Assembly (NCBI RefSeq): GCF_006345805.1
Contig: NC_043001.1
Span: 131,812,001-131,876,000 of the forward strand
Reading direction: 5' to 3'
DNA from: Octopus sinensis
Taxonomy: Eukaryota
Length of the DNA stretch: 64,000 bases
Position 1 is the first letter of the stretch. Each line of letters opens with the position of its first letter. Below are positions 28,884 to 64,000 of the stretch, piece after piece. Made by a program: the position numbers and the translations under genes. The notes under the pieces are model-generated. The model was not told the DNA's origin, ran no database searches, and was given only the letters and a program-made list of their open reading frames with translations.

Positions 28884-28951
<68 letters not shown>

Positions 28952-29149
28952 AATCCATCTAACCATATATATATATATATATATATATATTTATTTATAA
29001 ATATAAGAGTGTATAAAATATTTTTATACACAAAGAGGAGACCATTGACAGGACTTCTTACATGCTAAAAAAGCCAGTTAAAACCCAAACCACACAAAAG
29101 AGAATTCATGAGGCATGCTATTATAACACTAGAATGAACATGAAAATTA

Positions 29150-32724: not shown

Positions 32725-33103
32725 ATGAGAACAAATTTTATGAATCAGATATTTATTGGGTTCATTTATATATGTGTGTGTGTGTGTGTGTGTGCGTGTG
32801 TTCTATATATAAATATGTATATATAATATATACAAAGTGTATATATCTGTATTTATGTATATTAAACTTTTTTATACTTTTTGATAGTTATATATATTTT
32901 TATAAAAATTATAAATTTTTATTTTAAATTTAAACAATTTAAATTTTTCAATTTTATATTTTATATATTTTGTATATTATATTTTTATTTTGATGTTTTT
33001 GTTTTTTGTTTTTCACTGTTTGATTTGCCTATTAGTGGTTTTATCTCTAATTTAATTTATACATATATATATATAATTTGTATACATTTGTATATATAAT
33101 GCG

Positions 33104-53059: not shown

Positions 53060-54830
53060 ACATGCACTCAACTGCCATGTATCAGACCCCCACATACTCA
53101 TACATCCATCATACAGAACACACAATACACAATACACACACACACACACACGCACCACACACGCGCGCACACACAAAAACAAACACAAACACACACACTC
53201 AACTGCATGTATCAGACTCCCACATACTCATACATCCATCACACACCACACAATACACATACACACACACACAGACCACACACAAACACACACCACAATC
53301 TAACTGGCATGTATCACCTCCACATACTCATACACCATCACACAAGACACACCAATACACAATACACACCCACACAACTACACACACCACACACACGCAC
53401 ACGCACACACAAATGCGATGCACAACACACACACAAACACATACACACACACTCAACTGGCATGTATCAGACTCCCACATACTCATACATCCATCACACA
53501 GACCACACAATACACAATACACACACACACACACACACATGCACACACACACGCGCACACACACTCACACACACACACACACACACACACACAACACAAA
53601 CACATACACACACACTCAACTGCCATGTATCAGACTCCCACATACTCATACATCCATCACACACACCACACAATACACAATACACACACACACAGACACA
53701 CACAAACACACACACACACTCAACTGGCATGTATCAGACTCCCACATACTCATACATCCATCACACAGACCACACAATACACAATACACACACACACACA
53801 CACACATGCACACACACCGCGCACACACACTCACACACACACACACCACACACAACACACACCACACAAACCATACACACACACTCAACTGCCATGTATC
53901 AGACTCCCACATACTCATACATCCATCACACACACCACAAATACACAATACACACACACACACACACAAACATGCCACACACACACGCGCACACCCACTC
54001 CACAACAACACACACACACACACACACACACAACACACACACACACACTCAACTGCCATGTATCAGACTCCCACATACTCATACATCCATTCACAACACC
54101 ACACAATACACAATACACACACACACAGGACACACACAAACACACACACACACTCAACTGGCATGTATCACACTCCACATACTCATACACCATCACACAG
54201 CACCACACAATACACAATACACACACACACACATACACACACACACACGCACACGCACACACACATGCGCGACACACACACACACCAAACACCACAAAAC
54301 ATACACACACACTCAACTGCCATGTATCAGACTCCCACATACTCATACATCCATCACACACACCACACAATACACAATACACACACACACACACCACACA
54401 CACACTCAACTGCCATGTATCAGACTCCCACATACTCATACATCCATCACACACACCACACAATACACAATAACACACACCACAACACAGACACACACAA
54501 CACACACACACACACTCAACTGGTATGTATCAGACTCCCACATACTCATACATCCCCACACAGACCACACAATACACAATACACACACACACACACACAC
54601 ACAATGCCACACACACACGCGCACACACACTCCACACCACACACCACACACACACACACAACACACACACACACACACACTCAACTGGCATGTATCAGAC
54701 TCCCACATACTCATACATCCATCACACACACCACACAATACACAATACACACACACACACACACACTCAACTGCCATGTATCAGACTCCCAAATACTCAT
54801 ACATCCATCACCCAGACCACACAATACACA
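53060..54830 (+). repeat. Compound minisatellite: 14 copies of a ~45-nt core separated by variable (CA)n
   Basis: Core CTCAACTG(C/G)CATGTATCAGACTCCCACATACTCATACATCCATCAC, counted by eye. Confidence 0.95.
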
Positions 54831-57542
54831 CCACAAACACACACACACACACACATACACACACATTGACACACACAACACACAGAGAAGCAAACAAACA
54901 AATTAATAAACAAACAATAATAATTTCAAATCAGCATTTAATTCATTTATAGAATATGTTCATCTAAACCCTCATTTTATTAATTGTTAAATGTATTGTT
55001 TTGGTTGTCACAAATCACTAAATCATATCGTAAGTTACTCCATCCCAAGAATGAGAAGTCAATTGCCATTTATTGTTCCATAGTTAGTTCATTGAAAATT
55101 TGTAGTTTCATAATTCTAGCTCCAGGGCAAAATTTGAAAATTTGAAAAGTTAATTTGTTATTTCTTTTCCCTTTTTTTATTTTTTTTATAATTTTGCATT
55201 CTTTTGTCTACCTTTTTTTTTTTAGTCAACCTTCCCTTGTGCCTGTGAATTAGATTCTTCTTTAACTTGTTTTTTGATTTGAAAAAAAAAAAAAAATTCT
55301 CTCCTTTGCATCTTCTCTTTATTTCTTTCTACCTTTATCTTTTTCTCTTTGTCTCTCTCTCTCCCTCTCTGTCCATCTGTGTCTCTCTCTCTCTCTCTCT
55401 CAGTCTCTGCGTTTCTTTTTCTCTGGCTCTTCTTTTTTTCCCCACCCCTTTATCCCCCTTCTTGTTCTCTTTCTGCACATGTCTTTCATTCCGTCCGTTA
55501 ATCTTGCACCATCATTTATCTGCTTCTTCATTGTCTTTCTATTCCTCCTCCTCTCCTCCTCCTCCTCCTCCTCTCCTCTTCCTCTTCTTCTTCTTCTTCT
55601 TCTTCTCTCTCTCTCTCCCTTCCCTACTACATCTCTCATTTTCTTTCTTTCTCTCCCTCTCTATTCGTCTCATTTCCCCCTCTCACTCCTCTCTTTCTCA
55701 TCTTCCTCTCTCTTTCACCTCCTCTCTCTCTCTCCCTCATCCCCTCTCTCTCAGCCCCTCCTCCCCCCTCGCACCCCTCCTCCTCTCTCAATTTACTTTC
55801 TTGAAAACAATTTCTTTCTGAATACCAATTCACTGACATGGATATGAAAAATAAATGACTAAAGATTGCCCTGGGGCATTTATATAAACTTAACTTCTTT
55901 GGAAATTTACTGATATTTTTGTTTTTCAATTTACCATTCCTTTTGTTGTTGTTGTTGTCATTAATGTAGAAATTTTCTGCTCGTTTTTTTTTTTTTGTTT
56001 TCTTAGAATCAGTTTTATAATTATTACATTTTTTTGTTATAATTTTTATGAGAAATTATAATTAGGCAGCAGAGATTAGGATAGAGAAGGAGATAGAGAG
56101 AAACAGTATGATGTAGAGAGGGAAAGAGAGAGAGAGGGGGGGAGAGATAGAAAGAGGGAGAGAGAGAGAGAGGAAAAGGCAGAGAGTGAGTAGTAGGAAG
56201 AAAAAAGAAGAAACATGTTAACAATTACTGTTGAGGGTAGATTAAAAATTATGAAAAAAATAATGGTCAAAATAAGAAAAAAGAAAGAAAGGAAAAAGGA
56301 AAGAAAGAAAGAAGGAAAGAAAAAAAGAAACTATAAAGTTTGATAATGATGCTACCAAGAGTTATGAAATGAGATTGGTTAGTTTGTTAAAAATGACAAT
56401 AATATTGCAATTTAAATCTTGATGTGAAACAGAGTAAAGAACATCCGTCTATATTGTGGAAAATTAGTAAATAGACAAACAAGCAAATAAATACAATAAA
56501 TAAATTTCATTTTTTTTTTCACGACAAAAATTTTGAAAAAAAATACAAAATAATTTATCAAGAAAAAAAAAAAGGAAAAAAAAAGGAAATTTTTACATTC
56601 GTTATTTGATATCATTTTTCTCCCTTATCATAACTAGTTGATTATGAGTTTTGCATGATTAGTTATTTGAGACTTGTTAGTATTTAGTGCTATGACAGCA
56701 AACATTTAAACACCCACTAATGATGACTATAAAGTCTTCGGAGCCTAGCTTATACTACAAAAAAAATTTCAAATTACCTCCAAAAACAAAAAATAAATAA
56801 ATACAATGAAAGGAAAAATGAAATAATTCGCCTTAAAAAATACCAGTTGAACCTCACTAATATGGCATTTGCTCATCAGGCAGCTTCGTTAATTTAGGAT
56901 GAGGATTAAAATCTGTTCTTCGTTATTAGATTGTATGATTACTGTTTGGTCCAATTTGGTGCTACTGGTGCCCCATGACATGCTCAGCGTAGTTGATTCT
57001 GCTACAGATATTTGTGTGTTTTTTTATCTTTTACTAGTTGTTTCAGTTGTTGTACTGTGGCCATACTGGAGCACTGCCCTGAAATAGTCAAATAGATTGG
57101 CCTCAATACATATTTTTAGTTTGGTATTTATTGGTGTTTATTCTATTGGTCCCTTTTGCTGAACTGCTAAATTATGGGGGCATACACACACATGCACACA
57201 CAAAAATACATACACTCACAAGCAAACACACACACACATACACACACAAAAATACACACACTCGCAAGTAAACACCCACACACATACACACATGCACACA
57301 CAACAGATTTCTATACAACTTCCATCAACTAAATTCGTTCACAAGGCATCAGTTGGCCCGAGGGGCTGTAGTAGAAAACACTTGCCTAAGGTACCATGCA
57401 GTGGAACTGAACTTGAAATCACATGGTCACAAAGCAAGCTTCTTAACCATAAACTCATGTCTGTCCTTTAATTATAACTTACATTCATTGCTTGTTCTGA
57501 GAGACAAACAATGAATGCAAATATTGACAGGTTACACAAGGT

Positions 57543-58266: not shown

Positions 58267-58342
<76 letters not shown>

Positions 58343-58363
58343 CTCTTTTCTCTCCTCTCTCTT

Positions 58364-58464
<101 letters not shown>

Positions 58465-58551
58465 TATTAGAGACAAAACCACTATTTTGCAAAACAAACA
58501 AGGAAAGACTTAATCAATACATAAAATTTTAATAAATAGTCAAAAAAACCG

Positions 58552-58594
58552 CCACTACAATTGTTTCTTGTCTTGATCGACAATCTTCAGGTGG
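58552..58594 (-). ncRNA. Mirror copy of the type I hammerhead motif in the left arm
   Basis: Exact reverse complement of 61076-61118. Confidence 0.75.
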
Positions 58595-58629
58595 ACTTCC
58601 AATAAGTCAGTTTCAATTATGAAGTGAAA

Positions 58630-58906
58630 TTAAATTCTGTTCTTGGGAATGTAACAAAACTATTTTCATCCCAAGAACCACCATCACAAAATGCTTGCAT
58701 AATAGAAACAACACCTGCTGAAGGCAAAGGTTTTGCTGCATAGAAACTTGCTTTCCATGGATGAGCTGGCTGTTTTCTTCGAATTAAGATCAAGATGACA
58801 ACAACACTAAAGGAATAAATTGTTCAAACAGCAGAACCAACGGTGAACGCTTCTTCAGAGTAAAGTTTTTCCAAAGTAGCAAACGAAGTTGATGTAAAAA
58901 GCCCAT
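58630..58906 (-). pseudogene. ABCA2: Mirror copy of the ABCA2-like fragment in the left palindrome arm, frameshifted
   Basis: Reverse complement of 60761-61039. ATG at 58906. A 1-nt deletion near 58800 (GACAACAACAC vs GACAAACAACAC) gives [38 protein letters not shown]. Confidence 0.85.
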
Positions 58907-60760
58907 ACTGATGCAAATATGGTTAGCTTGCTCAATAAGAGAAAGGACACGACTGGCTTAGTTCGATATGAAATAGAAGAATATTGTTATGCTACAAGAA
59001 GGCTGGCTGAGAATACTGAAGAGGAGAAAACGGTAGATAACGTCACAACCAGTGATAATAATGAGACCAGGTGTTCCATTCTTAGAGCAGTCATGTATCC
59101 TTAAGGCAAAAGGAGGATATAAATAAAGTGAGGTACAGTGCAAAAATTTTAGTGATTACAGGTGTAACTAGTTTCGGAGTAAAATCCGAATCTTGTAATC
59201 CTTCGTGATAAGTGCGCAACTGGATACTTCTATAAAACAGAGGATAGCAAATGTCTAAGATAATAGTCCAAAAAATAACAAGTTTTCCTATTACATTTAG
59301 TTAGTCATATAGTTACATTAACTATATTTTGGTTCCTTTCTTCCTGTGTATTCGTGAAATTGGATGAAAATTTACGAAGTAAATGAATTTTATACAAGCA
59401 GGAAAAAATCGTGAAGAACACTGTTTTTATATGAAGCCTTCTCAAACATATACTCGGAAGGAAATTGTTGCTGATGTGATCAATAAAGAAGCTAGTTTCG
59501 GGATAAATAAATGACACAACAACCACAATAAATAATAGTGAGGATTTAAGGGAAAAGAAATGAATGTTGGGGTTTCATTTAAGCTGTGGAATAGTCACTT
59601 CCCATGCCAAGATAGTTCTTCCATCTCTATGTTAAAATACTCCATACATTTGAACACTTGTTCACAGATATTTGACTGCAACTTCGATACTATATAATGC
59701 AATACAAGAGAGATTTATCTTGTTTGGACTTTCTGTCTACTTAGAGCAGGCGACGGTCAGTCAGCAATTTCAGTCGCCTACTCGTTCAGTTGTTAACAGA
59801 TTATTGCACAACACACACCGCACCATCATAGAAGGTGAATTGATGGTGCGGTGTGTGTTGTGCAATAATCTGTTAACAACTGAACGAGTAGGCGACTGAA
59901 ATTGCTGACTGACCGTCGCCTGCTCTAAGTAGACAGAAAGTCCAAACAAGATAAATCTCTCTTGTATTGCATTATATAGTATCGAAGTTGCAGTCAAATA
60001 TCTGTGAACAAGTGTTCAAATGTATGGAGTATTTTAACATAGAGATGGAAGAACTATCTTGGCATGGGAAGTGACTATTCCACAGCTTAAATGAAACCCC
60101 AACATTCATTTCTTTTCCCTTAAATCCTCACTATTATTTATTGTGGTTGTTGTGTCATTTATTTATCCCGAAACTAGCTTCTTTATTGATCACATCAGCA
60201 ACAATTTCCTTCCGAGTATATGTTTGAGAAGGCTTCATATAAAAACAGTGTTCTTCACGATTTTTTCCTGCTTGTATAAAATTCATTTACTTCGTAAATT
60301 TTCATCCAATTTCACGAATACAGGAAGAAAGGAACCAAAATATAGTTAATGTAACTATATGACTAACTAAATGTAATAGGAAAACTTGTTATTTTTTGGA
60401 CTATTATCTTAGACATTTGCTATCCTCTGTTTTATAGAAGTATCCAGTTGCGCACTTATCACGAAGGATTACAAGATTCAGATTTTACTCCGAAACTAGT
60501 TACACCTGTAATCGCTAAAATTTTTGCACTGTACCTCACTTTATTTATATCCTCCTTTTGCCTTAAGGATACATGACTGCTCTAAGAATGGAACACCTGG
60601 TCTCATTATTATCACTGGTTGTGACGTTATCTACCGTTTTCTCCTCTTCAGTATTCTCAGCCAGCCTTCTTGTAGCATAACAATATTCTTCTATTTCATA
60701 TCGAACTAAGCCAGTCGTGTCCTTTCTCTTATTGAGCAAGCTAACCATATTTGCATCAGT

Positions 60761-61039
60761 ATGGGCTTTTTACATCAACTTCGTTTGCTACTTTGGAAAA
60801 ACTTTACTCTGAAGAAGCGTTCACCGTTGGTTCTGCTGTTTGAACAATTTATTCCTTTAGTGTTGTTTGTCATCTTGATCTTAATTCGAAGAAAACAGCC
60901 AGCTCATCCATGGAAAGCAAGTTTCTATGCAGCAAAACCTTTGCCTTCAGCAGGTGTTGTTTCTATTATGCAAGCATTTTGTGATGGTGGTTCTTGGGAT
61001 GAAAATAGTTTTGTTACATTCCCAAAGAACAGAATTTAA
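60761..61039 (+). pseudogene. ABCA2: N-terminal fragment (92 codons, intronless, truncated) of an ABCA2-like ATP-binding cassette transporter
   Basis: [92 protein letters not shown] aligns without gaps to the recalled ABCA2 N-terminus ([37 protein letters not shown].SAG...MQ..C.DG..DE.GF). The reading frame stops at TAA, no convincing GT donor follows, and no further ABCA exons are seen in the window. Confidence 0.85.
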
Positions 61040-61287
61040 TTTCACTTCATAATTTGAAACTGACTTATTGGAAGTCCACCTGAAGATTGTCGATCAAGAC
61101 AAGAAACAATTGTAGTGGCGGTTTTTTTGACTATTTATTAAAATTTTATGTATTGATTAAGTCTTTCCTTGTTTGTTTTGCAAAATAGTGGTTTTGTCTC
61201 TAATAATATTTTATAATATTTTACTATAAAATTGGATTTAATCCTAAATCTGATTTTTTTCCCTGTAAATTTGGATTTATTCCCTAA
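61033..61287 (+). mobile_element. Probable PLE terminal-repeat (pLTR)-like tail fused to the ABCA2 fragment
   Basis: Begins where ABCA2 similarity ends, contains the hammerhead, is AT-rich and ends at a (TA)n tract. The left-arm copy (58455-58637) is about 70 nt shorter. PLE identity is inferred from the ribozyme type. Confidence 0.5.
61076..61118 (+). ncRNA. Type I minimal hammerhead ribozyme motif (PLE terminal-repeat type)
   Basis: CCAC-CTGAAGA-TTGTC(GATCAA)GACAA-GAA-ACAATTGT-A-GTGG. Stem I CCAC/GTGG, core CUGANGA/GAAA, 5-bp stem II, palindromic stem III, predicted cleavage after GUA (61114). Confidence 0.75.
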
Positions 61288-61294
61288 TATTTAT

Positions 61295-61375
<81 letters not shown>

Positions 61376-61590
61376 TCATACACACACACACACATATATA
61401 CACATATAGATATAGACTTATATACATATATATGTATGTATGTGTCTTTGTGCTTGAGCTTGCCCCCTGCTATTGCTTGACAACAGGTATTAGTTTGTTT
61501 AAATGTCTCGTAATAGGTCTGGGCCAATCAAAGACTCATGAGTAGAAAGAAACTGAAAAAAGCCTGCTGTATATATATATATATATATAT

Positions 61591-61683
<93 letters not shown>

Positions 61684-61732: not shown

Positions 61733-61839
61733 AAATAGCAGTCAAAACTTGATTCTAAAACCACATTAAATGTTCATACAGCACCAGGTGCTGTATGAAC
61801 ATTTAATGTAGTATTAGAATCAAGTTTTGACTGCTATTT
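61733..61839. repeat. 107-bp near-perfect palindrome (53-bp arms, 1-nt centre at 61786)
   Basis: AAATAGCAGTC...ACAGCACC-A-GGTGCTGT...GACTGCTATTT with 2 mismatches. Confidence 0.95.
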
Positions 61840-62729
61840 TAAATAATTATTACCTTTGAAGGTTTTTATTCCCATGCTGGCCACCTGAGAATATCGGTAT
61901 TTAAATATCAATCTTATCCTTATTTGTATAAATTTATATATATATATTTATATATATATATATATATATATATGGTGTTTGTATCCCCATCACTGCTTGA
62001 CAACTGGTGTTGTTTTGTTTATGTCCCCATGACTTATAAATTCAGCTTAGGACACTGATCGACTTAAGAAAAAATAAGTACTGAGGTCAATTCATTTGAC
62101 TAAAACCCTTCGAGGCAGTGCCCCCAATATGGCTGCAGTTTTACGACTGAAATTGCATCATGTTCTAGTCTCTGCTTTGGCATGTTTTCTATAGCTGGGT
62201 GCTCTTTCTAATGCCTACCACTTCATATCATGTACTGGGTGCATTTTTATGGTACCAGTTCTATTGAGACTGTCAGGGAGTTTGCATGACTAAGAAACCC
62301 AAGGGGGGCAACCCTATGCTAGGAATAAAAAAAGAGAAGCCAAAACAGAACCTGTTTCTACTTTTTTTTTTTTTTTTTTTCGCTGTCGAGGTGCTGTGTA
62401 ACTATTCACCTTTTAGAAGAGAGGGTTGGAATGATTGAATGAAACAAGAGAGCAATAAGTGATGACTGACAGTGCTGAGCATCAGAAGAATAAGGATGAA
62501 ACAGTAGACAGAAGGATGAGAGCTGGATAATGTTGCACAGGTTGCACATGTAATGGAGAAGAGAGAGAGAGAGAATATAATACATGAGGAGAGTGAAAGA
62601 TATATGGTGATGGAGGAGGATAGTTGTTGACTCAGTGGTGTGGGCGATCAATGAATGTGTAGATGGAAAGAACAGTGTTAATGGATAAAGGGTGGATGAC
62701 AAGTGAAATGGTTCTGGGCAATAATTAAT

Positions 62730-63155
62730 GCACCCTTTTAAAGCCTAGCCAGGCTCATGGGCCCGGTTTCCTGGTTTCTATGGTGTATGTGTTCCTCAAC
62801 TGGACGGGATGCCAGTCCATTGCAGTATTACTCATTTTTGCCAGCTGAGTGGACTGGAGCAACATGAAATGAAGTGTTTTGCTCAAGAACACAACACGTC
62901 GCCCAGTCCAGGAATTGAAACCACAATCTTACGATCATGGTACTGACACCCTAACCACTAAGCCATGTGCCTCCACAGTTAATGCACCCTTTTAAAGCCT
63001 AGCCAGGCTCATTTTTAGCAGCTGAGTGGACTGGAGCAACATGAAATGAAGTGTTTTGCTCAAGAACACAACACGTCGCCCGGTCCAGGAATTGAAACCA
63101 CAATCTTACGATCATGGTACTGACACCCTAACCACTAAGCCATGTGCCTCCACAG
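62730..63155 (-). mobile_element. SINE family D with a local tandem duplication (62978-63155). Related copy at 27560-27865 (+)
   Basis: tRNA-like head and the domain CTTGAGCAAAACACTTCATTTCATGTTGCTCCAGTCCACTCAGCT. Confidence 0.8.
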
Positions 63156-64000
63156 TTCTGGGCAATAAGAAAAGTAAAAGGTATGGAGGAAAAGTTGCAA
63201 TTAAGTAGATAATGGGGATATCTTGATGAGAAAGGTAACTGTGTGAAGGGCACAGTCTTGCATAAAGACACACAGCTTAATCAAAACTCAGTTTTGCCCA
63301 GTTGGGCGGGTCTTTTCAAGAATTGCATATTATGGTCATCTCAATCCTTTGTCCTCATGTGTGTGCATGTAAGAATGTGCCTATATGTGTGTATGAATGT
63401 ATATGTGTGTAATGCAGTTCCATAGGGAAAATATGTGCTTTTAAAAAATGCATGTTTTTTTTATAGTTATTGTAAAGAATAAATATAATTATATTTTTTT
63501 TTAGAGAAATAATCTCCACCAACATTGGCCTGCATCAGAAATTTTCTATTTTTTAAGTGAGAAACTTAAGGTAAAAAAAAAAAGGAAAATATTTCAAATA
63601 TTAAAAAAAAATTTTGGAGCTTTTAATATGGCATACATCTAAATTCAATCTCACCTCATTGTTGCACACATTATATTTTAATTTCTTCATTAAATTGAGT
63701 CATTTCACGTTCAAAACTATGAGGAACAGGAATCAGTTGAAAAGAACTGTAATGTAATCAAACCTGTTTGAATTTTATCATGACTCTTGGTCTATCAAAC
63801 AAAAGAGATGGTGGAGGAATTTGAATTTAGTACCATATGCTAAAATTATCATTAATTATTATAGGTTCAAGCATGGCTGTGTGGTAAGAAGCTTGCTTCC
63901 CCAACACATGGTTTCAGGTTCAACTCCACTGCCTTGCACCATATGCAAGAGTCTTTTACTATATGAATGGGAAGCAGCTTGATACTCATATTTTCTGCCT

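What the first reader, a model, noticed from the sequence alone, without database searches (positions are those of the whole stretch)
60761..61040. ABCA2 fragment is intronless and switches to the hammerhead tail at a position matching a conserved phase-2 exon boundary
SEEN: 90 codons run uninterrupted and similarity ends at ...AAC AG|A ATT TAA (61032/61033) with no GT donor. RECALLED, needs verification: vertebrate ABCA1/ABCA2 have introns after codon 22, near codon 53 (phase 1), and in phase 2 at the position aligning to codon 91 here. INFERENCE: the sequence derives from spliced mRNA, and the junction may be a splice from an ABCA2 exon donor into a cryptic acceptor of an intronic PLE (exon trapping), followed by trans-mobilisation. 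The alternative is an RT template switch.
Basis: partly seen in the sequence, partly recalled or inferred. Interest (0 to 1): 0.72.

Follow-up and report, generated by a model that had tools for sequence, protein, structure and literature searches.

The report
Spliced ABCA2 fragment fused to ribozyme tail
The start of an octopus lipid-transporter gene (ABCA2), with its introns already removed, is joined exactly at an exon boundary to the hammerhead-ribozyme end of a Penelope-type jumping gene and inserted as a mirror-image pair, which looks like a retrotransposon copying host exons it had trapped by splicing.

Summary
Bases 60761-61036 are an open 92-codon frame. Codons 1-91 are identical to ABCA2 of Octopus vulgaris, O. 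sinensis and O. bimaculoides. The native protein continues R91-VHEF; the window reads R91-I-stop.

I read ABCA2 genomic loci of a bivalve, a hemichordate and a penguin. All have introns after codon 22 (phase 0), inside codon 54 (phase 1) and inside codon 91 (phase 2). The window lacks the first two. Its similarity ends at AG|A of codon 91, with no GT, GC or AT donor.

The 183-nt tail carries a complete minimal type-I hammerhead motif (61076-61118). Rfam does not score it.

The arms are 58455-59828 and 59841-61215, with the tails outward and (TA)n on both sides. This is the usual inverted layout of Penelope-like element (PLE) insertions.

Best reading: a spliced ABCA2 exon 1-3 / PLE-tail chimeric RNA was retro-copied by PLE machinery.

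Not shown: the octopus parental exon structure, because the gene was too long to fetch; the copy number; and the donor PLE. This is a new variant of known kinds, of moderate interest.

The parts
59841..61215 (+). Right arm of the palindrome: one full copy of the chimeric unit, made of upstream non-coding sequence, ABCA2 codons 1-91 and the hammerhead tail
   Evidence: 1374/1382 identity to the reverse complement of 58455-59828
58455..59828 (-). Left arm: inverted second copy. Its ABCA2 part (58906-58637) carries 1-nt deletions in homopolymer runs that break the frame
59829..59840 (.). 12-nt non-palindromic spacer (TAGAAGGTGAAT) at the centre, where the two 5' ends meet head to head
   Evidence: The Rfam miRNA-like hits here only reflect the long hairpin
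59841..60760 (+). 920 nt upstream of the ATG: non-coding, no Pfam domain in any frame. Inferred to be the 5' UTR of the copied transcript (not shown)
   Evidence: Unique in the window apart from the other arm
60761..61032 (+). ABCA2 codons 1-90 plus the first two bases of codon 91, with no introns at the conserved positions (codons 22/23 and 54)
   Evidence: 91/91 identity to three Octopus species; intron positions in other animals
61033..61215 (+). 183-nt tail, unrelated to native ABCA2 exon 4. It is the 3' end of a repeat family of PLE pseudo-LTR type
   Evidence: Its last ~55 nt recur at 33008-33061, also next to (TA)n
61076..61118 (+). Minimal type-I hammerhead motif: helix I 4 bp, helix II 5 bp, helix III 1 bp closing a palindromic AAUU loop. 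Predicted cleavage lies between 61114 and 61115
   Evidence: The dimer fold gives an 8-bp intermolecular helix III (ACAAUUGU)
58552..58594 (-). The same hammerhead motif in the left arm
61216..61297 (+). 82-nt extension present only at the right outer end, between the arm and (TA)36. It may be the one-sided 'tail extension' described for PLE insertions (inferred)
   Evidence: PMC8557442
58425..58458 (.). (TA)17 flanking the left outer end: the putative AT-rich target
61298..61369 (.). (TA)36 flanking the right outer end: the putative AT-rich target
33008..33061 (+). Solo, diverged copy (80% over 55 nt) of the last part of the tail, also followed by a TA microsatellite

Best explanation
The unit is a young retro-copy of a chimeric RNA. 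The steps, marked as shown or inferred:

1. Shown: the copied sequence is the 5' part of octopus ABCA2 mRNA with introns 1 and 2 removed. It ends exactly at the exon-3 donor position, which is phase 2 in codon 91.
2. Inferred: in the source transcript, that donor was spliced to a 3' splice site inside the pseudo-LTR of a sense-oriented Penelope-like element (PLE). That PLE probably sat in the following ABCA2 intron. The acceptor lay 43 nt upstream of the element's hammerhead ribozyme.
3. Inferred from published PLE biochemistry: PLE reverse transcriptase/endonuclease recognised the pseudo-LTR part and started reverse transcription internally, about 100 nt downstream of the hammerhead cut site. 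It copied back through the tail, exons 3-2-1 and the 5' UTR to the RNA 5' end.
4. Shown as anatomy, inferred as mechanism: both strands of a cut in a (TA)n microsatellite were used as primers. Two cDNAs therefore run towards each other and meet head to head, which gives the 1,375-nt palindrome with the tails outward and a 12-nt filler at the centre.

The 92-codon ORF is most likely a non-functional by-product.
For: - Codons 1-91 are 91/91 identical to three Octopus ABCA2 proteins, and divergence starts at codon 92.
- No further ABCA2 exon lies anywhere in the window, including 58 kb downstream of the left copy.
- Conserved introns after codon 22, in codon 54 and in codon 91 are seen in bivalve, hemichordate and bird genomic loci. 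The first two are also seen in Limulus.
- There is no splice donor at the junction, and a stop follows two codons later.
- A complete hammerhead core sits in the tail. Its architecture (short helix III, palindromic loop, dimer-competent) is the one described for metazoan PLE pseudo-LTRs (PMC4209133).
- The palindrome has its tails outward. This matches the 'inverted 5'-truncated copy adjacent at the 5' end' of PLE insertions and their microsatellite/(TA)n preference (PMC8557442).
- It also matches the finding that a purified PLE protein cleaves and extends both DNA strands at AT-rich sites and initiates internally downstream of the hammerhead (PMC11167929).
- In Drosophila virilis Penelope, a natural intron acceptor maps at the 5' end of hammerhead helix I (PMC4209133). 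A splice acceptor in this part of a pseudo-LTR therefore has precedent.
- PLEs are known to mobilise host genes in trans (PMC3846280).
- The tail's 3' end recurs elsewhere in the window next to (TA)n.
- There is no poly(A) at the arm ends.
Against: - The octopus parental exons 1-3 were never seen, so the presence of introns there rests on conservation in other phyla.
- No PLE reverse transcriptase or GIY-YIG coding sequence was found in the arms, and the rest of the window was not screened for one. The tail is assigned to PLEs only by motif and architecture.
- No Rfam hammerhead model scores the motif, and self-cleavage is untested.
- Target-site duplications cannot be read in the (TA)n flanks.
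- The copy number in the genome is unknown.
- Compound (TA)n...(GATA)n microsatellites lie in mirror orientation on both sides. The palindrome could therefore have arisen later by DNA-level fold-back that included flanking DNA.
- Most differences between the arms are homopolymer-length indels, which could be long-read errors.
- A 920-nt 5' UTR is long.
Confidence: 0.62

Rival explanations
1. Same chimeric retro-copy, but inserted once. The palindrome arose afterwards, either by a DNA-level inverted duplication (fold-back replication or repair) or as a long-read assembly artefact.
For: The arms differ mainly by 1-nt homopolymer indels, which is typical of read errors. (TA)n and (GATA)n tracts lie in mirror orientation outside both arms. 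A second small perfect hairpin lies 520 bp away.
Against: The palindrome is bounded on both sides by different unique sequence inside the window. It has a 12-nt asymmetric spacer, two transitions and a 2-nt indel between the arms, and an 82-nt extension at one end only. Inverted double copies are the published norm for PLE insertions (PMC8557442). Compound (TATC)n(TA)n microsatellites also occur elsewhere in the window.
Confidence: 0.17
2. The junction was made by reverse-transcriptase template switching from the PLE tail RNA to an ABCA2 RNA during cDNA synthesis, not by splicing.
For: Template jumping is a known property of retroelement reverse transcriptases (own knowledge). The junction has a possible 1-nt overlap: the A at 61033 fits both the native codon AGA and the tail.
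Against: A jump would have to land exactly on the last base of exon 3. That position was verified as a conserved phase-2 intron site in three phyla. The only RNA with a 3' end there is a short-lived splicing intermediate. The predicted hammerhead cleavage site (61114/61115) does not create the tail's 5' end at 61033.
Confidence: 0.07
3. It is the native 5' end of ABCA2. Octopus would have lost introns 1 and 2, and the sequence after 61032 would be intron 3.
For: There is 91/91 amino-acid identity with the annotated Octopus proteins, and the ORF starts at the natural ATG. The parental locus could not be inspected.
Against: There is no GT, GC or AT-AC donor at or near the codon-91 position, and an in-frame stop follows. 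Two inverted copies exist. Exon 4 is absent from the 3 kb to the right and the 58 kb to the left. The annotated models that join codon 91 to codon 92 come from annotation pipelines which, as far as I know, normally require canonical splice sites. If so, a copy with a proper donor must exist elsewhere.
Confidence: 0.04
4. It is a LINE-mediated processed pseudogene of an alternative, prematurely terminated ABCA2 transcript whose last exon happens to contain a hammerhead-bearing repeat.
For: The fragment is intronless and ends at an exon boundary. An ATTAAA hexamer is present in the tail. A LINE reverse-transcriptase fragment exists elsewhere in the window.
Against: There is no poly(A) or LINE 3' tail at either outer end. 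Both ends sit in (TA)n. The inverted full-length double copy is not the twin-priming pattern of LINEs, in which the segments do not duplicate each other. The tail's terminus recurs as a repeat end by itself.
Confidence: 0.04

Closest known systems
Penelope-like element (PLE) insertions with pseudo-LTRs and an adjacent inverted 5'-truncated copy (PMC8557442, PMC3846280)
   Same: There is a hammerhead motif in the terminal repeat. The inverted head-to-head layout has the 3' ends outward. The flanks are AT-rich/(TA)n. An extra extension is present at one end only. There is no poly(A).
   Different: No reverse transcriptase/GIY-YIG ORF and no upstream direct pseudo-LTR are present. The body of the unit is host mRNA sequence. 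Both arms are of equal length.
PLE-mediated mobilisation of host genes in trans in the rotifer Adineta vaga (NRPS gene between Pen3a pseudo-LTRs, PMC3846280)
   Same: Host coding sequence is carried by PLE terminal sequences to a new site.
   Different: There the host gene kept all its introns, lay between two direct pseudo-LTRs and had a clear 8-bp target-site duplication. Here the host part is spliced, truncated at an exon boundary and joined only to a 3' pseudo-LTR piece.
SVA_F1: MAST2 exon 1 spliced onto an SVA element and then retrotransposed (exon trapping; Hancks et al. 2009, cited in PMC10681720)
   Same: A host first-exon donor is spliced to an acceptor inside a retroelement. The chimeric RNA is then retro-copied, giving 5' transduction by splicing.
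   Different: SVA is copied by LINE-1 and has a poly(A) tail and target-site duplications. SVA_F1 became a multi-copy subfamily, whereas the copy number here is unknown and the machinery would be a PLE.
Minimal/type-I hammerhead ribozymes of metazoan PLEs and retrozymes (PMC4209133; bioRxiv 10.64898/2026.07.22.740005)
   Same: It has the CUGANGA...GAAA...UH core, a short helix I, a 1-bp helix III with a palindromic loop, and a predicted dimeric active form.
   Different: It is a single motif per arm, not a tandem retrozyme array. It is not scored by Rfam models, and its activity is untested.

Membership tests
Processed (mRNA-derived) gene copy | Lacks introns that the parental gene has | tested here: inconclusive
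   Introns after codon 22 and in codon 54 are present in bivalve, hemichordate, bird and horseshoe-crab loci and absent here. The octopus parental locus could not be fetched.
Processed (mRNA-derived) gene copy | Boundary of the copied segment coincides with an exon boundary | tested here: met
   Similarity ends at AG|A of codon 91. This is the phase-2 intron site in Solemya, Ptychodera and Aptenodytes.
Processed (mRNA-derived) gene copy | Poly(A) tail and target-site duplication (LINE-type) | tested here: not met
   There is no poly(A) at either outer end, and the flanks are (TA)n, so a duplication cannot be read.
Penelope-like element insertion | Hammerhead ribozyme motif in the terminal repeat | tested here: met
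   The motif lies at 61076-61118 and 58594-58552. The chance expectation is 0.0125 per window.
Penelope-like element insertion | Inverted copy adjacent at the 5' end, forming inverted repeats | tested here: met
   The arms are 1,375 nt with 1374/1382 identity, a 12-nt spacer and the tails outward.
Penelope-like element insertion | Reverse transcriptase plus GIY-YIG endonuclease ORF (autonomous element) | tested here: not met
   No Pfam domain appears in six frames of the arm. If PLE-mobilised, the unit is non-autonomous. The rest of the window was not screened systematically.
Penelope-like element insertion | AT-rich / microsatellite target | tested here: met
   (TA)17 and (TA)36 abut the unit. 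A solo tail end at 33008-33061 is also next to (TA)n.
Penelope-like element insertion | Sequence homology of the tail to the pseudo-LTR of an identified PLE family of the same genome | not testable with these tools
   No searchable octopus genome or repeat library was available. The metagenome scan for the hammerhead sequence found nothing.
Hammerhead ribozyme (type I) | Conserved catalytic core and three helices | tested here: met
   The core is CUGAAGA / GAAA / UA. Helices I and II appear in the monomer MFE, and helix III forms as an 8-bp intermolecular duplex in the dimer.
Hammerhead ribozyme (type I) | Match to curated covariance models | tested here: not met
   There is no Rfam hammerhead hit at the gathering score or at E<=10.
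Hammerhead ribozyme (type I) | Self-cleavage | not testable with these tools
   This needs in vitro transcription of the monomer and dimer.
Non-LTR retrozyme | Tandem array of hammerhead-containing monomers | tested here: not met
   There is only one motif per arm, in opposite orientation and 2.5 kb apart.
Native ABCA2 exon | Canonical splice donor at the exon end and downstream exons in order | tested here: not met
   AG is followed by AATTTAA. Exon 4 is absent from the window.

The most novel reading that the evidence does not exclude
A PLE sitting in an intron of octopus ABCA2 traps the upstream exons through a splice acceptor in its pseudo-LTR. PLE reverse transcription starts internally, next to the hammerhead, so whatever is spliced upstream is copied. 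This would be a general, PLE-specific route to exon shuffling or 5' transduction. It could also seed a new non-autonomous family, an invertebrate counterpart of SVA_F1.
Probability: 0.25. Interest if true: 0.7.

Novelty: new variant of a known kind. Interest (0 to 1): 0.5.

Why it matters
PLEs are the least understood class of retrotransposons. So far they are known to move host genes with their introns retained. A spliced host-exon/pseudo-LTR chimera, integrated in the typical inverted double-copy form, would give three things. It would be natural in vivo support for internal initiation of reverse transcription and for priming on both strands, which have so far been seen only in vitro. It would show that splice sites inside pseudo-LTRs can capture host exons. 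It would also add PLEs to the elements that can shuffle exons in invertebrate genomes. Practically, such copies can mislead gene annotation of cephalopod genomes, because they add an extra ABCA2 'first exon'.

Tried and rejected
- Rfam at gathering and at E<=10 gave no hammerhead. It returned only miRNA-like hits caused by the palindrome centre.
- A protein search with the 92-aa ORF returned only short, distant proteins and missed the 2,506-aa octopus protein that shares 91 residues. A full-length query was needed.
- A search with the first 400 residues of octopus ABCA2 found no short octopus ORFs that could have given access to the native 5' exons.
- No DNA could be fetched for the O. vulgaris, O. 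sinensis and O. bimaculoides ABCA2 loci. Their gene ranges are 190, 210 and 146 kb.
- The Lingula contig lacks the 5' exons. The Actinia and Crypturellus loci were too fragmentary. The Gallus protein is not on record. The Bradybaena gene is too long.
- Ten window ORFs and the 92-aa ORF are not in the protein collection, so no other genomic copies could be reached.
- A metagenome scan for the hammerhead sequence gave 0 hits.
- I deduced the native exon-4 mRNA from two overlapping reading frames of the O. sinensis isoforms. It gave only a 19/21 match upstream of the ATG (E=0.11), which I judged to be chance.
- Pfam on six frames of the arm found nothing.

Full report
**What is at the coordinates.** Bases 60761-61039 (+) are an ORF of 92 codons plus a stop. 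It is the N-terminus of an ABCA2-type transporter. A search of 1.84 billion representative proteins gave ABCA2/ABCA1-family N-termini as hits. Many partial hits end at residue 53 or start at residue 23-26, which is a first hint of exon boundaries there. A full-length query then retrieved Octopus vulgaris ABCA2-like protein P0192. The window ORF matches it at 91 of 91 residues. It then diverges: the native protein continues ...FPKNR-VHEFLGEV, and the window reads ...FPKNR-I-stop. The O. sinensis and O. bimaculoides proteins are identical over the first 150 residues. The window is therefore from an Octopus or a very close relative. The break lies at AAC AG|A (61032/61033), or one base later, since the native codon 91 is also AGA. 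What follows is AATTTAATTTCAC. No GT, GC or AT-AC donor is present.

**Intron positions.**
- In the bivalve Solemya velum (L001), exon 1 ends ...AGT CCA|gtaagt after codon 22 (phase 0). Exon 2 ends ...GCA G|gtttgt inside codon 54 (phase 1). Exon 3 ends ...TCC AG|gtactg inside codon 91 (phase 2). Exon 4 starts after ...ttcag|T GCG.
- The hemichordate Ptychodera flava (L005) and the penguin ABCA2 gene (L006) have introns at the same three positions and in the same phases.
- Limulus (L002) shows the first two.

There are no length differences among these proteins over codons 1-91, so the numbering transfers directly. These introns therefore predate the bilaterian radiation. The window copy has no intron at the first two positions. 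Its similarity to ABCA2 stops exactly at the third.

The octopus parental locus could not be read, because the gene spans 146-210 kb in the three species and the tool returns no DNA for such ranges. The parental exon structure in octopus is therefore inferred, not shown. The annotated models that join codon 91 to codon 92 come from annotation pipelines which, as far as I know, normally require canonical splice sites. If so, a copy with a proper donor exists somewhere other than here.

**Not the native exon.** Exon 4 (VHEFLGEVQSVAKDNNFF...) is absent from the 3 kb to the right of the ORF. It is also absent from the whole 58 kb that lie downstream of the second copy on the other strand. I deduced the native exon-4 mRNA from the two overlapping frames used by the O. 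sinensis isoforms X1 and X2. It has no similarity to the tail.

**The palindrome.** The arms 58455-59828 and 59841-61215 are reverse complements with 1374/1382 identity and are separated by a 12-nt asymmetric spacer. Each arm contains three parts: 920 nt of non-coding sequence upstream of the ATG, with no Pfam domain in any frame; the 272-nt ABCA2 piece; and a 183-nt tail. The tails point outward. The left copy has two transitions, a 2-nt indel and four 1-nt homopolymer indels relative to the right one. Two of these break its reading frame. Nothing comparable in size or perfection exists elsewhere in the window.

**The tail.** At 61076-61118 the tail carries CCAC-CUGAAGA-UUGUC(GAUCAA)GACAA-GAAA-CAAUUG-UA|GUGG. 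This is a complete type-I hammerhead core with a 4-bp helix I, a 5-bp helix II and a 1-bp helix III closing a palindromic AAUU loop. The motif occurs only in the two arms. Shuffled windows give 0.0125 such motifs on average, with 4 of 400 shuffles giving any. The monomer minimum-free-energy fold keeps helices I and II. Two copies fold into a dimer with an 8-bp intermolecular helix III. This is the architecture described for hammerheads in the pseudo-LTRs of metazoan Penelope-like elements, which are thought to act as dimers (PMC4209133). Rfam's models do not score it, and cleavage is untested.

The last ~55 nt of the tail recur at 33008-33061 (80% identity), again followed directly by a TA microsatellite. 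The outer end of the arm is therefore the terminus of a repeat family. The unit is embedded in (TA)n: (TA)17 on the left and, after an extra 82 nt found only on the right, (TA)36. There is no poly(A).

**Mechanism.** Published PLE biology matches this anatomy point by point.
- PLE insertions often carry an inverted 5'-truncated copy next to the 5' end.
- They show a short extension at one end only, and they prefer microsatellites, (TA)n among them (PMC8557442).
- A purified PLE protein cleaves and extends both DNA strands at AT-rich sites. It starts reverse transcription internally, roughly 90 nt downstream of the hammerhead cut site, not at the RNA 3' end (PMC11167929). Here the arm ends 100 nt past the predicted cut.
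- In Drosophila virilis Penelope, a spliceosomal intron ends at the 5' edge of hammerhead helix I (PMC4209133). A 3' splice site in this part of a pseudo-LTR therefore has precedent.
- PLEs can move host genes in trans (PMC3846280).

The simplest account has three steps. An ABCA2 pre-mRNA containing a sense PLE in a downstream intron was spliced from the exon-3 donor to the pseudo-LTR acceptor. The PLE machinery bound the pseudo-LTR part and copied everything upstream of its internal start site. Priming on both sides of a break in a (TA)n tract then gave two head-to-head cDNAs reaching the RNA 5' end.

The steps differ in how far they are established. The processed nature of the host part, the exon-boundary junction, the hammerhead motif, the palindrome and the flanks are shown. 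The donor PLE, the acceptor, the enzyme and the double priming are inferred.

**Rivals.**
- Template switching does not explain a junction exactly on an exon boundary. The hammerhead cut site also does not create the tail's 5' end.
- A native exon is excluded by the missing donor, the stop codon, the duplication and the missing exon 4.
- A LINE-type processed pseudogene is unlikely without poly(A) and with full-length inverted duplication.
- The palindrome could be secondary, through DNA fold-back or misassembly. This remains open. Mirror-oriented (TA)n...(GATA)n tracts outside both arms and the homopolymer nature of most arm differences speak for it. The unique flanks, the asymmetric spacer, the substitutions and the one-sided extension speak against it.

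**Comparison and verdict.** The closest known cases are two. [quoted passage not shown] The other is exon trapping by SVA, which created the MAST2-SVA_F1 subfamily (cited in PMC10681720). The present case combines the two: host exons captured by splicing, as for SVA_F1, but on a PLE backbone. It is a new variant of known kinds. It rests on one locus, with the parental gene and the copy number unverified. Interest is moderate.

Noticed in passing
61733-61839: A second, small, near-perfect hairpin (53-nt arms, 96% complementary, 1-nt spacer) lies 520 bp to the right of the large palindrome. It may be a MITE-like or fold-back element.
   Followed up: partly
53118-54884: A 1.8-kb strongly C/A-rich block with GC skew down to -0.67. 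It has a higher-order ~163-nt tandem unit embedded in degenerate (AC)n.
   Followed up: partly
44037-44752: Overlapping ORFs on both strands. The + strand ORF (LGILVDSSF...ARGILFLIRRSF...LVRPILEYG) looks like the C-terminal part of a LINE reverse transcriptase. This was judged by eye only.
   Followed up: no
61216-61297: The 82-nt extension found only at the right end of the palindrome contains two ~21-nt direct repeats (AAATTGGATTTAATCCTAAAT / AAATTTGGATTTATTCCCTAAT). It starts with a repeat of the last 10 nt of the arm (TAATATTTTA).
   Followed up: no
60570-60590 and 59077-59097: A 19/21-nt match (TACATGACTGCTCTAAGAATG) to the deduced native ABCA2 exon-4 mRNA (codons ~135-142), 190 nt upstream of the ATG in each arm. 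With E=0.11 it is probably chance.
   Followed up: yes
28884-28989, 58270-58458, 61570-61681: Compound (TATC)n/(GATA)n plus (TA)n microsatellites recur three times. Two of them flank the palindrome in mirror orientation.
   Followed up: partly
61430-61565 and 61975-62150: SINE-like fragments (…gcttgacaac.ggt.tt.gtttgttta…) lie on the right flank. The first one seems to split a (TA)n tract.
   Followed up: no
62831-62980 and 63008-63157: A 150-nt direct repeat with 98% identity, spaced 177 nt start to start.
   Followed up: no
P0277 (O. sinensis ABCA2 isoform X2): Its first 51 residues are a +1-frame translation of the exon encoding residues 93-143 of isoform X1. It therefore looks like an annotation artefact of a transcript that lacks exons 1-3.
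   Followed up: partly
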